This document shows, piece by piece, positions 42,572 to 46,338 of a DNA stretch of 64,000 nt. Position numbers and translations under genes: made by a program. Each line of letters opens with the position of its first letter. The first letter of the stretch is position 1. This DNA comes from Polymyxa betae A26-41. Lineage: Eukaryota; Protista; Endomyxa: Phytomyxea. The notes beneath the pieces were generated by a model. That model worked only from the letters and a program-made list of their open reading frames with translations. It searched no databases and was not told where the DNA came from. The stretch lies in contig RBZT01000623.1 in the NCBI GenBank assembly GCA_003693705.1, positions 207,671 to 271,670 of the forward strand. The letters are read 5' to 3'.

Positions 42572-45500
42572 TTAATAATCTGATATTGATACCTTGCTTG
42601 ATTCATCTGGCTCTTCTCGTATAACTGCTTGTTGCATTTCAACCTCTTCTTCTTGTTCCTCTATGAGATCACCTGCAATTGAGCTTGCATCACGACGTTG
42701 TAATGAATCAGTGTGATTCGATGTGCTAGAGAAAGCAGATGCTTGATCATCCTTGTCATCATCTTCATTATTTTGCTGATCTTCTTGTAAATCAGGTAGA
42801 TGTGGATTGATTGTTGGTGGTGTCCTCTTCTTCAACCTCGTGGACAGATCTACACCATCGCTTGCACTTCGTTGATGTCGTCCCATCTCACTCGTAGACG
42901 GTATTGACTCGTCATCAGTAGTCTCCTCAATGCTGTTCTTATCTTCAAAATCGTCAATCAACTCAAGCTTGGGCTGCTCGGCAGGCCTTAAGAACATCTC
43001 GACACGGAAACCTGCATCGAATTTGTGGTTTTTGTCTGGACAAAACTCAGGAAAGCTATCATGGCAACTCGTCTTTCATACCTGCTTTGTCTAGACCATT
43101 TTTATCAAGGATCGCGTGATTATTATCGATGAAGTCCATATTAATCCAGAACGAGAACATGAGTTTCTTGTATCAGTATAAATGTGATGATATTAAGCAC
43201 AGAACCAGCATACCTTTCCAGTTGCAGTTTTATGATAAACAGTCACTTTAATATCTCCATTTACAACACAATCGACAGGTATATCGACAATATTCTTCCC
43301 AGGTCTAGTCACATTAACTTTACTCAGTAGAGAGTCGTATATCAGATTTCGATTTCTGTAAATGCGACAGAACGGATCTAAAATCGTTTCGTTAAGATAG
43401 GATAGATTATTGCAATAATACAGATTGTACCGCAACCACCTAACGGGCTCAGATCAGGCTCAGGAGATAATCGAATTAGGACGATATTGTGATAGATGCC
43501 ATCGAATTGAAACGGCTTCGTGTCATTGGCAGTTTGCTGTAAGTATTTCTCGAAAGTGTATCTAGACGAGCATTTAGAATGATATAGAGACAAACCAGTG
43601 TTGGCTTACACAGCCCGTATTTGACTTGGTATTGTGACGCCTTTACCATCAGCCGTGCGCTGATCACCAAAGAATTCGAGCGCATCCGCAGCGGTTGGTT
43701 TTGACCCTGAAAATAACAGAAATGAAGCTGCCATAACTCCAGTTCTGCCTTTGCCAGCCTTGCAATGTGTTGCAACAACATTCTCAGGATGGGCATCCAG
43801 ATACGCTTTCACATCACGACAGAAATCGACAATCGTTTTGAGTGGAGGTGGGTTATGATCATCAAAGGGGAATGACGCCACATTATTGTCGAAACATGCA
43901 GGATCGTATGACCTCTCCGAGCATAAATTGATAACACGACAGTGACCGTCATGATATGTCTTCACAAATCTTTGAACTTCTTCCATCGGATTGCGATATA
44001 CGCCCTCAAGATTTGATGAAGGAAAACCCATTACAATCATCTGAAAACCAAATTATTGGCTACTATTCTTTGAGTTGTGGTGGCTTACTTGAGATGTCAG
44101 ATAGGTCAAATCGAGGTCGAACCCATCGACTTGAAACCGATGCTTGTTTTTACTAACAAGTGATCGCAATTTGCCAGATAATTTGCCAGAAACGTCCTGA
44201 AGGATAGATGCACGACGATGAAGCTTTGGAGCTAATAGTACTGATGGGCGACGAGCTCTTCCAACTCCTTTCACTGAACTTGACGTGATTGAGCGCTTCA
44301 GAATCTTTCTAGAAGAACTCGCTGAGCTTTCTTCAGCGTGCTTGCTGACAGTATATTTAACTTTGATATCGATAGTGACAAATCCCATCTGGACACCATC
44401 TCCATTACATAGTTGCACTTTACGCTTCTGACAACCATGAAAAGCCAGATCAACAGGTTCATTAGCGAAAGCCATCGAAACGTGACCAATGCATAGCTCG
44501 ATCTTCAACATGGCATTATTTGCTGCAGCAACAGCGTCATGATCGAATTCAAATTTCGTGTTCCATGCAGGTGTGTTAGTTCCAGAAACATCAGATAATG
44601 TCGACCAAGATGAATTTCCATATGAGAGACGGATTGCAGGTTCAATCAAGCCTTCGGGAAATTCGCTGCCTTCTTTCACTCTGACTTTAAGACGAATTGG
44701 AGCATCTGGACCAGCATCTGGAATAGTCCTTGTGAGACCGTTCCAATGCAATGACGTCCAGTTGATGCTTTGAAAGAATCCATGATTCAAGGTATCTGTA
44801 ATATCGACTCCTAAGCGATGATTTGGATCATGAATTAGACATCGCTTGATGAAGTCTTGAGCATGTTCGGAAACAAAAGGCGGAAACCTGACAGACCCCT
44901 CTCGAACTTTAGATAATAATTCATCGCGGGTCTTGGCTCGGAAAGGAGGAAATCCAACCAGCAGCTCATAGAGCAATGAACCCAGCCTCCACCAATCTGA
45001 TAGAACCGACTCGCCATGGCCTGAGATCAACTCGGGCGTCCAAAACTCGTCAAATTTTTCTCCCATTGGTAACTGATCACTCTCAGCAGATTTCACAGAA
45101 CTGAAGGCGATCGCTTCCAGATCCAGAACCATGATATGGTCCATTGCATCTAATCCGATATATTCCGGCTTCATATTCTTAAATAACCGACCGCTGTGAT
45201 GCAGAAATGCAGTAAATAGAACGATCTCGGCGAGATAGCTGCAAGCTTGCTGTTCAGGCAGGCGTTTCACAGCACGAAGTCGGTCGAATATGGTCGAATT
45301 ACGAGCAACGAACGTATATGCAGCCCATGACCTATCAGGAGTATGGCCAGAAAACATCAATCGAGCGAAGAAGGGATGATGCAGGTCAGGTTTGTTCATA
45401 AGCTTGATAAGCGTATCTCCTTTCTCAAAATGATCATCCCTTTTCATTACAACTTGCAACAAAAAAGAGTCTCCAGTCTGTTTAAGAATCGCCCGATGCA

Positions 45501-46338
45501 ATGATCCAATGCAACAATCAGCCACTTTATCGCCACGTTCGAAGTCGGCATATCCGAATTCGTTGCTGTCTGGAGAATCGTTATTGAATAAAGTCAGGCT
45601 CTTATTGATGCTTTGCGATCGCTTCATGGCGTTCCTGATTAGATTCGCTACTTTAGGGCTAGTTTGTGGCGATGTGCCAAAATCGGATTGGTGTGAAGAA
45701 TATTCGTGAATAGATTGGGAATTAGAATCGTTGTCAACAAACAGAGTGTCAGCATTGGTACTATTGCTTATTCGACTTTTCAAAGGCGAAGTATTGTTAT
45801 TGTTTGAGGTCCTTCCCACAGTTCCGAAATAGCCACTATTGTTCAGAACATTGGATACTCGGATTGGTGTGAAAGCCTTTGAATTTAGCCCAGCAGATAT
45901 TGATGGAGCAGTTAGATTATCACCTGAGGAGCCGCCTGAAGGCATTGCCCCTGAAGCGGTCGCTTTCCAGAATTTCCCATTAGCTGTTGTTTGTGGAGAC
46001 AATGTTGGAGATCCAGCATGAATCTCTTTCGCAGCAATCCAGCATCTGTTTAGAGCAGCAACCCAATTATCAGCTTCTTCTACAGAACCAGCATCCAGAT
46101 CAAATATTCTAGTGGTGACTTCGATTCGCAATCGGGTGGGCTTGTCCGGAATTGTTTCGATTGACGTGACCTCAGCAAGAGGAATAACGCCACTGATTTT
46201 AGCTATATCGTCTTGTTTGGCATAGGCCAGCCGTCCATCAAATAAGAAAAAAAACCGCTTCTGCCAGGCTCGCATGCCTGAAATTCCTTTCGGGCTCTTC
46301 TTTTTTAAACATCCTTTCAGAATTGGTACGTCTGTCAT
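42572..46338 (-). CDS. PH - AGC pseudokinase - C2 - PTEN-family lipid phosphatase - PTEN C2 - acidic tail fusion protein
   Basis: One 2.2 kb exon runs from PH (KGCLKKKSPKG..AWQKRFF) through a degenerate kinase and C2 (NTPAWNTKFEF) into the PTEN N-terminus LRSLVSKNKHRFQVDGFDLDLTY. Later exons give MGFPS...YRNP, NLCSERSY, DDHNPP, HCKAGKGRTG, GVTIPSQ.R and C2 (GDIKV..YHK; FWINMDF). Confidence 0.9.

What the first reader, a model, noticed from the sequence alone, without database searches (positions are those of the whole stretch)
42572..46338. Akt-like PH-pseudokinase fused to an intact PTEN phosphatase in one polypeptide
Seen: PH, an AGC kinase fold, C2 and the PTEN N-terminal motif (LRSLVSKNKHRFQVDGFDLDLTY) share one uninterrupted exon, so the fusion is not a gene-merging artefact. 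The PTEN P-loop HCKAGKGRTG and DDH loop are intact. The kinase has lost the Gly loop (ADCCIG), the VAIK Lys (FLLQ), HRD (FKN) and DFG (DLE). Known: PH+AGC kinase is the Akt/PKB layout that reads PIP3, and PTEN erases PIP3. GAK/auxilin has the reverse state, an active kinase with a dead PTEN-like domain. Inference: a reader-eraser in which the PH domain targets the phosphatase to 3-phosphoinositides and the dead kinase acts as an allosteric or dimerisation switch. I do not know this architecture from characterised proteins.
Basis: partly seen in the sequence, partly recalled or inferred. Interest (0 to 1): 0.88.

Follow-up and report, generated by a model that had tools for sequence, protein, structure and literature searches.

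The report
PH-pseudokinase-C2-PTEN fusion gene, Rhizaria family
A plant-root protist (almost certainly Polymyxa betae) has one six-exon gene joining a lipid-binding PH domain, a dead AGC-type kinase, a C2-like domain and a seemingly intact PTEN lipid phosphatase; the same layout is conserved across Rhizaria but, as far as I could find, nobody has studied it.

Summary
On the minus strand, 46338-42572 holds a six-exon gene of 1174 codons. The five introns are 46-53 nt and all GT-AG.

- **Exon 1** is an uninterrupted 750 codons. It carries PH, an AGC-like kinase fold, a divergent C2-like domain and the PTEN N-terminal motif.
- **Exons 2-6** carry a PTEN phosphatase core (E 4e-46 to human PTEN, ungapped), a PTEN-C2 domain and an acidic tail. 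The P-loop HCKAGKGRTG, the DDHNPP loop and the KGVTIPSQ loop are all present.
- **The kinase is dead.** It lacks the Gly-loop, the VAIK Lys (Q), the HRD Asp (N) and the DFG Gly.

This is neither a one-off nor an artefact.
- The exons map colinearly and contiguously onto a 1358-aa Plasmodiophora brassicae protein.
- At least 14 clusters (50% identity) share the PH+pseudokinase+PTEN layout.
- The 30 PH-pseudokinase relatives tabulated (15 of them PTEN fusions) show the same catalytic losses.
- Every member that carries an organism name is rhizarian.

"Akt-like" holds for the layout only; by sequence the kinase is a generic AGC kinase. PIP3 reading by the PH domain and a switch role for the pseudokinase are untested. 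No RNA reads could be laid on the region, and no paper on this architecture was found.

The scan had already noted this stretch and its convergent PH-pseudokinase paralog. Verdict: a real, conserved, uncharacterised variant of PTEN.

The parts
44089..46338 (-). Exon 1 (750 codons, phase 0 at its end): PH, linker, pseudokinase, C2-like domain, linker and the PTEN N-terminal motif.
   Evidence: ORF; splice landmarks; no internal stop and colinear with P0177 residues 17-782.
46018..46329 (-). PH domain (residues 4-107).
   Evidence: Pfam PH E 8e-12; AlphaFold pLDDT 83-96; nearest solved are Myosin-X PH2, TAPP1 and PLEKHA; 57% identical to the P. brassicae ortholog.
45964..45978 (-). Conserved short motif GKFWK inside an otherwise disordered Ser/Asn-rich linker (residues 109-258).
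   Evidence: K125 is nearly invariant over 20 family members. The block is 67% identical to P. brassicae, against 30% for the rest of the linker. pLDDT is below 50. Its function is unknown.
44734..45552 (-). AGC-type pseudokinase domain (residues 263-535).
   Evidence: Pfam Pkinase E 7e-21; PDB best hits RSK/S6K/PKC/PKA/PDK1 at E about 1e-29; catalytic motifs lost; pLDDT 81-98.
44353..44697 (-). Divergent C2-like beta-sandwich (residues 548-662). The loop that holds the Ca2+-binding Asp residues in relatives is shortened.
   Evidence: No Pfam hit here. It aligns to Pfam-positive C2 domains of P0002, P0003, P0026 and P0032. Both models show eight strands. The Foldseek top 50 are all C2 domains, best E 4e-5, TM 0.46-0.64.
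44089..44172 (-). PTEN N-terminal basic (PIP2-binding-type) motif and the first strand of the phosphatase, at the end of exon 1.
   Evidence: 75% identical to P. brassicae; aligned in the family.
43610..44040 (-). Exon 2: PTEN phosphatase core, with DDHNPP at 43863-43846, the P-loop at 43767-43738 and the TI-loop.
   Evidence: E 4e-46 to human PTEN, ungapped; 74% identical to P0177 residues 783-924. Intron 1 is 44088-44041 (48 nt, GT-AG).
43431..43561 (-). Exon 3: end of the phosphatase domain and start of the PTEN C2 domain.
   Evidence: Maps to P0177 residues 927-969, 49% identity. Intron 2 is 43609-43562 (48 nt). The P. brassicae ORF also ends at this position.
43214..43377 (-). Exon 4: PTEN C2.
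   Evidence: Pfam PTEN_C2 E 2.6e-7; maps to P0177 residues 971-1024, 50% identity. Intron 3 is 43430-43378 (53 nt).
43082..43166 (-). Exon 5: PTEN C2.
   Evidence: Maps to P0177 residues 1025-1053 and P0002 residues 986-1010. Intron 4 is 43213-43167 (47 nt).
42572..43035 (-). Exon 6: last strands of PTEN C2 (to about 42968), then an acidic Asp/Ser/Glu-rich tail of about 130 residues (net charge -23) and the stop TAA at 42574-42572.
   Evidence: Maps to P0177 residues 1055-1117; composition. Intron 5 is 43081-43036 (46 nt).
40792..42472 (+). Convergent neighbour gene: a paralogous PH + pseudokinase of about 500 aa with no C2 or PTEN. Four exons, boundaries approximate.
   Evidence: ORFs; Pfam Pkinase E 5e-31; 42% identical to the fusion's kinase domain; the same lost motifs; 5' exons read. 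Its P. brassicae ortholog lies about 1.6 kb from the fusion ortholog.

Best explanation
This is one real gene of a plasmodiophorid, almost certainly Polymyxa betae. It encodes a 1174-residue protein with this order: PH, disordered linker, catalytically dead AGC-type kinase, Ca-independent C2-like domain, linker, complete PTEN module (N-terminal basic motif, phosphatase, PTEN-C2) and acidic tail. It belongs to an old family that, by every named member, is rhizarian.

Most likely it is an active PTEN-type 3-phosphoinositide phosphatase. Extra lipid-binding modules (PH, C2-like), added to PTEN's own basic motif and C2, would set its membrane recruitment. The pseudokinase would serve as a conserved non-catalytic docking or regulatory module.

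Shown:
- the gene structure;
- domain identities;
- intact PTEN catalytic residues;
- loss of kinase catalytic residues throughout the family;
- conservation of the architecture.

Inferred:
- lipid-phosphatase activity and its substrate;
- lipid binding by the PH and C2-like domains;
- any regulatory role of the pseudokinase or the acidic tail.
For: Gene model:
- A 750-codon open exon plus five short GT-AG introns.
- Each exon was handled separately and maps colinearly and without gaps onto P. brassicae P0177 (17-782, 783-924, 927-969, 971-1024, 1025-1053, 1055-1117).

PTEN module:
- E 4e-46 to human PTEN, with identical P-loop, DHNPP and KGVTIPSQ loops.
- Pfam PTEN_C2 on exon 4.
- Most fused relatives keep HCKAGKGRTG.

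Pseudokinase:
- Motif table of the window fusion, its neighbour gene and 30 PH-pseudokinase relatives, 15 of which also carry PTEN. In all of them the Lys is H, Q, S or L, the HRD Asp is lost and the DFG Gly is lost.
- Four active kinases in the same table keep all three.
- The DFG Asp, the catalytic-loop Glu, DWWRLG and GFPPF are invariant or nearly so. This argues for selection on a non-catalytic function.

Family:
- At least 14 clusters at 50% identity carry the PH+Pkinase+PTEN layout. In P0043 and P0083 the kinase-like region was seen with my own HMM only.
- Named members are P. brassicae, Lotharella globosa (a single MMETSP transcript) and Amorphochlora. Nonionella has PH-pseudokinase only, and Paulinella has PH, pseudokinase and C2 without PTEN. 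All are Rhizaria.
- Holding the fused PTEN cores together as one clade is not rejected (p-AU 0.64, lnL 26.9 better than the free quick tree).

Substrate plausibility: the genome has three PI3K helical-domain loci, two of them with a Ras-binding-domain hit, that is class-I-like.

Folds: PH pLDDT 83-96, kinase 81-98, C2-like 55-83, linkers below 50.

Genome identity: 1001 contigs and 27.09 Mb match the P. betae draft.
Against: - No transcript evidence for this genome. The four RNA runs tried hold nothing of the organism, so a PTEN-only isoform from an internal start is not excluded.
- No biochemical data exist for any member.
- The PH signature for 3-phosphoinositides has a conserved Gln at one basic position.
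- The C2-like part has no Pfam hit, and jackhmmer from it reaches only P. brassicae. Its model is of modest confidence and was built with true C2 domains in the alignment.
- A few fused relatives (P0037, P0043) lack a recognisable HCxxGxxR, so phosphatase activity is not universal in the family.
- The PTEN-core tree is poorly resolved. The tested set also wrongly included P0059, a PH-less protein with an active-looking kinase fused to PTEN.
Confidence: 0.7

Rival explanations
1. Two-gene module. The fusion protein works as a heterodimer with the product of the convergent neighbour gene (PH + pseudokinase, 40792-42472), pseudokinase to pseudokinase. The short paralog would gate or localise the PTEN-bearing one. 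This refines the best explanation rather than excluding it.
For: - The two paralogs end 99 nt apart, tail to tail.
- Their P. brassicae orthologs are also linked, about 1.6 kb apart.
- Both keep the same invariant C-lobe blocks.
- Short PH-pseudokinase forms of about 500 aa also occur in Nonionella and in unnamed contigs.
Against: - No interaction test was run.
- Linkage can simply be the remnant of a tandem duplication.
- Orientation differs between the two species, and a desaturase gene lies between the pair in P. brassicae.
Confidence: 0.15
2. The PTEN module does not act on PIP3. It would be mainly a protein phosphatase, or act on another phosphoinositide such as PI3P or PI(3,5)P2. The PH and pseudokinase parts would then bring a protein substrate to it rather than reading a lipid.
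For: - PTEN is a dual-specificity enzyme (established knowledge).
- In other kinase-phosphatase fusions, a dead kinase has been proposed to bind the phosphatase's substrates, for example in P. infestans (PMC3019232).
- The PH signature is imperfect (and direct reading).
Against: - The residues that widen and charge the PTEN pocket for PIP3 are all identical to human PTEN: H and K in HCKAGKGR, the DH loop and the TI loop.
- Class-I-like PI3K loci exist in the genome.
Confidence: 0.12
3. Annotation artefact or separate expression. PH-kinase-C2 and PTEN are made as separate proteins, for example from an internal promoter or start inside or after exon 1.
For: No RNA evidence is available for this genome. 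An ATG opens exon 2.
Against: - The PTEN N-terminal motif and first strand lie inside exon 1, in frame with the kinase.
- In P. brassicae one 926-codon ORF runs from PH through the phosphatase with no intron at this point.
- Lotharella has the whole architecture on one assembled transcript.
- P0002 is on 3.4-kb intron-less contigs with short flanks, which look like transcripts.
- A protein starting at exon 2 would lack the first roughly 25 residues of the PTEN fold.
Confidence: 0.04
4. The kinase domain is an atypical but active kinase, or an ATP-binding switch that uses non-canonical residues.
For: The DFG Asp and the catalytic-loop Glu are invariant in 20 members. Some kinases tolerate a displaced Lys (established knowledge: WNK).
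Against: - The catalytic base (HRD Asp) is missing in every member.
- The Gly-loop carries no compensating Lys.
- The VAIK position is H/Q/S/L throughout.
Confidence: 0.06

Closest known systems
PTEN (human PTEN, PDB 1d5r/5bug) and its protist fusions
   Same: The phosphatase core aligns ungapped at E 4e-46, with identical P-loop, DHNPP and TI loops, an N-terminal basic motif, a following PTEN-C2 and an acidic Ser-rich tail. Protists carry many PTEN fusions, including PH-PTEN, RGS-C2-PTEN and LIM- or myosin-tail-PTEN.
   Different: About 720 extra N-terminal residues (PH, pseudokinase, C2-like), so the PTEN N-terminal motif is internal. The C2 CBR3-type loop is shorter and less basic (direct reading). 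No activity data exist.
Akt/PKB
   Same: An N-terminal PH followed by an AGC-type kinase fold. Full-length AKT1/AKT2 are the top Foldseek matches and the only ones covering both domains.
   Different: - The kinase is catalytically dead.
- By sequence it is no closer to Akt than to RSK, S6K, PKC, PKA or PDK1.
- A 150-residue disordered linker lies between PH and kinase.
- There is no Pkinase_C or hydrophobic-motif hit.
- The domain orientation is not Akt's (rmsd about 22 A).
GAK / auxilin
   Same: A kinase fold and a PTEN-type phosphatase+C2 module in one polypeptide. Auxilin's PTEN-like domain is a weak match to exon 2 (E 7e-12).
   Different: The states are reversed: GAK has an active kinase and a dead PTEN-like domain (established knowledge). 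The kinase family is different (NAK, not AGC). There is no J-domain hit here, and a PH and a C2 are added.
Plasmodiophora brassicae SPQ98034.1 / UniRef A0A3P3YCY3 (P0177, 1358 aa)
   Same: The ortholog. It has the same domain order, 40% identity over exon 1 and 74% over the phosphatase core, and two intron positions that appear shared. A PH-pseudokinase paralog is linked nearby.
   Different: A longer acidic tail and high GC. It lacks the window's introns 1, 4 and 5. It has only a machine-given name and no study was found.
Kinase-phosphatase fusions with a dead kinase in oomycetes and plants (PITG_08304 type: cNMP-binding + inactive kinase + PP2C)
   Same: An inactive AGC-group kinase joined to an active-looking phosphatase. 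The kinase-like part has been proposed to bind substrates (PMC3019232).
   Different: A different phosphatase fold (PP2C, a protein phosphatase), a different lineage and different accessory domains.

Membership tests
PTEN-type CX5R lipid phosphatase | P-loop HCKAGKGRTG with catalytic Cys and Arg and the two Lys | tested here: met
   Identical decapeptide at 43767-43738.
PTEN-type CX5R lipid phosphatase | General-acid loop (Asp-His, DHNPP) and TI loop (KGVTIPSQ) | tested here: met
   FDDHNPP and KGVTIPSQ align column for column with human PTEN.
PTEN-type CX5R lipid phosphatase | PTEN-specific C2 domain directly after the phosphatase | tested here: met
   Pfam PTEN_C2 E 2.6e-7 on exon 4. Exons 3-6 are colinear with the PTEN_C2 regions of P0177 and P0002.
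PTEN-type CX5R lipid phosphatase | N-terminal basic PIP2-binding motif before DGFDLDL | tested here: met
   A Lys/Arg/His-rich stretch directly before DGFDLDLTY, 75% identical to P. brassicae. Binding itself was not tested.
PTEN-type CX5R lipid phosphatase | 3-phosphatase activity on PI(3,4,5)P3 | not testable with these tools
   Needs an enzyme assay.
Catalytically active eukaryotic protein kinase | GxGxxG loop, VAIK Lys, HRD Asp, DFG | tested here: not met
   ADCCIGSL, FLLQVV, FKNMKPEY and LDL, against GKGSFGKV, YAVKIL, YRDLKPEN and DFG in active P0004. Only the DFG Asp is kept.
AGC kinase group | Kinase-domain sequence closest to AGC members | tested here: met
   The best 60 PDB matches are all AGC (RSK, S6K, PKC-eta, PKA, PDK1), E 2e-29 to 6e-26. 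DWWRLG, GFPPF and HxFF blocks are present.
AGC kinase group | C-terminal tail with turn and hydrophobic motifs (Pfam Pkinase_C) | tested here: not met
   No Pkinase_C hit in exon 1 at E up to 0.01. The C2-like domain follows about 12 residues after the kinase fold.
Akt/PKB | PH domain N-terminal to the AGC kinase | tested here: met
   Pfam order is PH 6-99 then Pkinase 278-522. AKT1/2 full-length structures are top Foldseek hits covering both domains.
Akt/PKB | Kinase domain specifically related to Akt, and active | tested here: not met
   Akt is not among the 60 best sequence matches. The catalytic residues are lost.
3-phosphoinositide-binding PH domains | Signature K-x-small-x(6-11)-[R/K]-x-R-hydrophobic-hydrophobic in strands 1-2 | tested here: inconclusive
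   The window reads K-K-S-x10-Q-K-R-F-F. One basic position is Gln, and W25/Q26 are nearly invariant in the family. The nearest solved PH domains are Myosin-X PH2, TAPP1, PLEKHA and cytohesin.
C2 domain (PF00168) | Profile match, or an eight-strand C2 sandwich | tested here: inconclusive
   - No Pfam hit in the window, and jackhmmer reaches only P. brassicae.
- Positional homologs are Pfam C2 at E 1e-22 to 1e-10.
- The model has eight strands at pLDDT 60, and the Foldseek top 50 are all C2, TM up to 0.64.
- The Ca-binding loop is shortened.
GAK/auxilin | NAK-type active kinase + PTEN-like domain + clathrin-binding region + J domain | tested here: not met
   The kinase is AGC-type and dead. No DnaJ hit in any exon.

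The most novel reading that the evidence does not exclude
An ancestral Akt-like PH-AGC kinase of Rhizaria lost catalysis and was captured as the sensing and regulatory head of PTEN. The eraser of PIP3 would then be recruited and allosterically gated by the module that in other eukaryotes reads PIP3. The linked short PH-pseudokinase paralog would act as its dimer partner. That would be a substrate-sensing feedback circuit built into one or two polypeptides, which may matter for polarity in amoeboid or zoosporic rhizarians.
Probability: 0.12. Interest if true: 0.8.

Novelty: new variant of a known kind. Interest (0 to 1): 0.55.

Why it matters
PTEN and Akt are the best-known opposing players of PI3K signalling. 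A conserved natural protein that welds an Akt-shaped but dead kinase to an intact PTEN offers three things:
- a ready-made system for asking how pseudokinases regulate enzymes in cis;
- a view of how PTEN membrane recruitment can be rewired;
- a first look at PI3K signalling in Rhizaria, a supergroup with almost no signalling biochemistry.

The hosts include plasmodiophorid crop parasites: Polymyxa betae, the vector of rhizomania virus, and Plasmodiophora brassicae, the cause of clubroot. A lineage-specific signalling enzyme is therefore also of practical interest as a marker or for studying zoospore and plasmodium biology. The value is limited for now because nothing is known of its expression, activity or partners.

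Tried and rejected
**RNA evidence.** The look-up of sequencing runs found only four small runs of one study that hold the stretch, none on record as RNA. Four RNA runs sharing the species label (X9, X12, X19, X18) laid 0-13 partial, non-specific reads. That is no test of expression or splicing.

**Complex prediction.** P. brassicae pseudokinase (300-596) against its PTEN module (755-1078) gave 'no answer', score 0.00. It is not evidence either way.

**jackhmmer from the C2-like region.** It recruited only P. brassicae orthologs.

**ESM Atlas feature search with exon 1.** It returned only generic kinase clusters and no large cluster with this layout.

**Word-indexed protein searches.** They recovered few family members. 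The exhaustive HMMER search was needed. The third search added no organism names.

**PTEN-core tree.** 144 rows by 141 columns, poorly resolved. The free tree needs 13 changes of the 'kinase-fused' label, while starred branches force only 2. The one-clade constraint was not rejected. That set included P0059, which Pfam later showed to be a different kinase-PTEN fusion, PH-less with an active-looking kinase. The test is therefore only a rough indication of a single origin.

**Look for a canonical Akt in the genome.** Five loci carry an AGC C-terminal domain. No PH domain was found in the sampled upstream ORFs. With short exons this is inconclusive.

**Oomycete origin.** This was my first guess from the Albugo hit.

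**Joined protein.** Exons were searched one by one by reference.

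
Full report
**What is there.** The minus strand between 46338 and 42572 carries a gene of six exons. Exon 1 (46338-44089) is a single open stretch of 750 codons. The remaining exons are 44040-43610, 43561-43431, 43377-43214, 43166-43082 and 43035-42572. They are separated by introns of 48, 48, 53, 47 and 46 nt, all GT-AG, read and located. The phases add up to 3525 nt, 1174 codons plus a TAA stop. I did not build or search a joined protein. 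Each exon was translated and compared on its own.

The exons map colinearly and without gaps onto one Plasmodiophora brassicae protein (P0177, 1358 aa). The mapped ranges are 17-782, 783-924, 927-969, 971-1024, 1025-1053 and 1055-1117. The one or two residues missing at three of the junctions are the split codons. That is strong support for the splice model and for a single polypeptide.

**Domains.**
- Pfam finds PH (6-99) and Pkinase (278-522) in exon 1, PTP-type models in exon 2 and PTEN_C2 in exon 4.
- Exon 2 aligns ungapped to human PTEN at E 4e-46. The P-loop HCKAGKGRTG, the DHNPP loop and the KGVTIPSQ loop are identical.
- The PTEN N-terminal basic motif and DGFDLDLTY sit at the end of exon 1, in frame with everything upstream.
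- An AlphaFold model of exon 1, built with 20 family sequences, gives a confident PH (pLDDT 83-96) and a confident kinase fold (81-98). The 150-residue linker between them is disordered and Ser/Asn-rich. An eight-strand sandwich spans residues 548-662 (pLDDT 55-83), followed by a second disordered linker.
- That sandwich has no Pfam hit in the window, and jackhmmer from it reaches only P. brassicae. It does align with Pfam-positive C2 domains of relatives. A separate model of it (pLDDT 60) finds only C2 domains in the PDB, best E 4e-5, TM up to 0.64. I call it C2-like, with the Ca-binding loop shortened.
- The last exon ends in a tail of about 130 residues rich in Asp, Ser and Glu, net charge -23.

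**The kinase is dead, and was so in the family's ancestor.** Aligned to an active AGC kinase, the window shows ADCCIGSL for the Gly-loop, Gln for the VAIK Lys, Asn for the HRD Asp and LDL for DFG. A motif table covers the window fusion, its neighbour gene and 30 PH-pseudokinase relatives, 15 of which also carry PTEN. It shows the same losses everywhere: Lys to H/Q/S/L, the HRD Asp gone and the DFG Gly gone. Four active kinases in the same table keep all three. Several positions are invariant or nearly so over 20 members: the DFG Asp, the catalytic-loop Glu, DWWRLG, GFPPF and the HxFF start of the AGC tail. The domain is therefore under selection for something other than phosphotransfer.

By sequence it is a generic AGC domain. 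RSK, S6K, PKC-eta, PKA and PDK1 lead at E about 1e-29, and Akt is not in the top 60. By layout, full-length AKT1/2 are the only solved chains that cover both PH and kinase, though with a different domain orientation.

**Whose genome.** G000 has 1001 contigs and 27,085,814 bases. The Polymyxa betae draft is described as 1,001 contigs, 27,085,946 bp and GC 45.1% (PMC6328671). The closest homolog is from Plasmodiophora brassicae. The window is therefore almost certainly P. betae (Plasmodiophorida, Rhizaria). Its assembly appears to have no deposited proteins, which explains why the protein itself was not in the databases.

**How widespread.** An exhaustive profile search of 1.84 billion cluster representatives found many proteins matching the whole profile.
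- Pfam and my own kinase-domain HMM show the PH+Pkinase+PTEN layout, often with C2 and PTEN_C2, in at least 14 clusters at 50% identity. These are P0027, 28, 31, 32, 33, 34, 37, 38, 40, 41, 43, 45, 53 and 83. In P0043 and P0083 the kinase-like region is seen by my HMM only, not by Pfam. P0001/P0177 and P0002 add to these.
- Related forms lack PTEN: PH-pseudokinase of about 500 aa, and PH-pseudokinase-C2.
- Members with an organism name are P. brassicae, Lotharella globosa (one MMETSP transcript), Amorphochlora amoebiformis, Nonionella stella and Paulinella micropora. All are Rhizaria. The rest are unnamed metagenome or run assemblies, so a wider range is not excluded.
- A PTEN-core tree is poorly resolved. 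Forcing the fused PTENs into one clade is not rejected and even scores better than the quick free tree (p-AU 0.64). One wrongly labelled row (P0059) was in that set.
- RGS-C2-PTEN proteins (P0107, P0168) share the C2-to-PTEN part. This suggests a C2-PTEN core with exchangeable signalling heads.

**Context in this genome.**
- The neighbour gene on the plus strand (40792-42472) is a paralog with PH and the same dead kinase, but no C2 or PTEN. It converges on the fusion gene with 99 nt between the stop codons.
- Its P. brassicae ortholog (49-59% identity) lies about 1.6 kb from the fusion ortholog, so the linkage is old.
- The genome has two more PTEN genes: a plain PTEN and a PH-PTEN.
- It has three PI3K helical-domain loci, two with a Ras-binding-domain hit. 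Synthesis of PIP3 is therefore plausible.
- A quick look for a canonical Akt found none but is inconclusive.

**How it most likely works.**
- Shown: an intact PTEN catalytic pocket, including the residues that in human PTEN make it fit PIP3. Also shown are PTEN's own membrane-binding elements (basic motif, C2), two further membrane-type modules (PH, C2-like) and a conserved dead kinase.
- Inferred: the protein is a 3-phosphoinositide phosphatase whose recruitment depends on several weak lipid contacts at once. The pseudokinase would be a docking or regulatory module. The acidic tail may act like PTEN's phospho-regulated tail.
- The PH domain's nearest solved relatives bind PIP3 or PI(3,4)P2. 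One basic signature position is a family-conserved Gln, so its ligand is open.
- A conserved GKFWK motif in the disordered linker is unexplained.

**What could not be done.** No RNA reads of the organism were available. The complex prediction gave no verdict. No paper on the architecture, or on the P. brassicae accessions, was found in the held library.

**Verdict.** The architecture is not unique: it is a conserved, database-visible but unstudied rhizarian family. It is a new variant of a known kind (PTEN with accessory domains), of moderate interest.

Noticed in passing
window 40792-42472 (+): A convergent paralog: PH + AGC pseudokinase of about 500 aa with the same lost catalytic motifs but an intact GxGxxG. 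It has no C2 or PTEN. Its P. brassicae ortholog is also linked to the fusion ortholog (L003:4026-5465).
   Followed up: partly
window 42458-42536: A 41-nt unit repeated 1.9 times (97% match). It starts inside the last codons and stop of the neighbour gene and fills most of the 99-nt gap between the two convergent stop codons. It may be a duplicated 3' end or terminator region.
   Followed up: no
window 45964-45978 (-): The GKFWK motif is conserved across the whole PH-pseudokinase family, inside an otherwise disordered, fast-evolving linker. It is a candidate short linear motif of unknown function.
   Followed up: partly
P0107, P0168, P0072, P0199 (unnamed contigs): RGS-C2-PTEN proteins share the C2-to-PTEN part with this family. 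Many other PTEN fusions turned up in protists: PH-PTEN, DEP-RGS-PTEN, LIM-PTEN and myosin-tail-PTEN.
   Followed up: partly
P0059 (737 aa, unnamed): An apparently active kinase (Pfam Pkinase 235 bits), without PH, fused to PTEN + PTEN_C2. This is an independent kinase-PTEN fusion. P0242 of Rhizopus has Pkinase+FHA+PTP.
   Followed up: no
G000:C574 (L037:4413-4706, then kinase exons from about 4754): An open frame matching the Myosin_TH1 lipid-binding tail domain lies directly upstream of an AGC kinase with a C-terminal domain. An unnamed protein, P0294, has the same TH1+Pkinase+Pkinase_C set. This is a possible TH1-AGC kinase architecture.
   Followed up: no
G000:C839:163400-164700 and G000:C462:39400-40800: Two further PTEN genes in the same genome: one plain PTEN+C2 and one PH-PTEN with several short exons.
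   Followed up: partly
window 27376-40655 (+): A very large multi-exon gene upstream with SPRY and RanBP zinc-finger hits. I did not test the HECT part.
   Followed up: no
window 9912-11765 (-), 12636-14273 (+), 47698-48792 (+): A tyrosinase with a weak CUB-like N-terminal part, a BIG/GBF-type Sec7 ArfGEF exon, and a BMT5-like methyltransferase joined to C2H2 fingers.
   Followed up: no
window 52000-64000: GC falls from about 44% to 32-38% over the last 12 kb.
   Followed up: no
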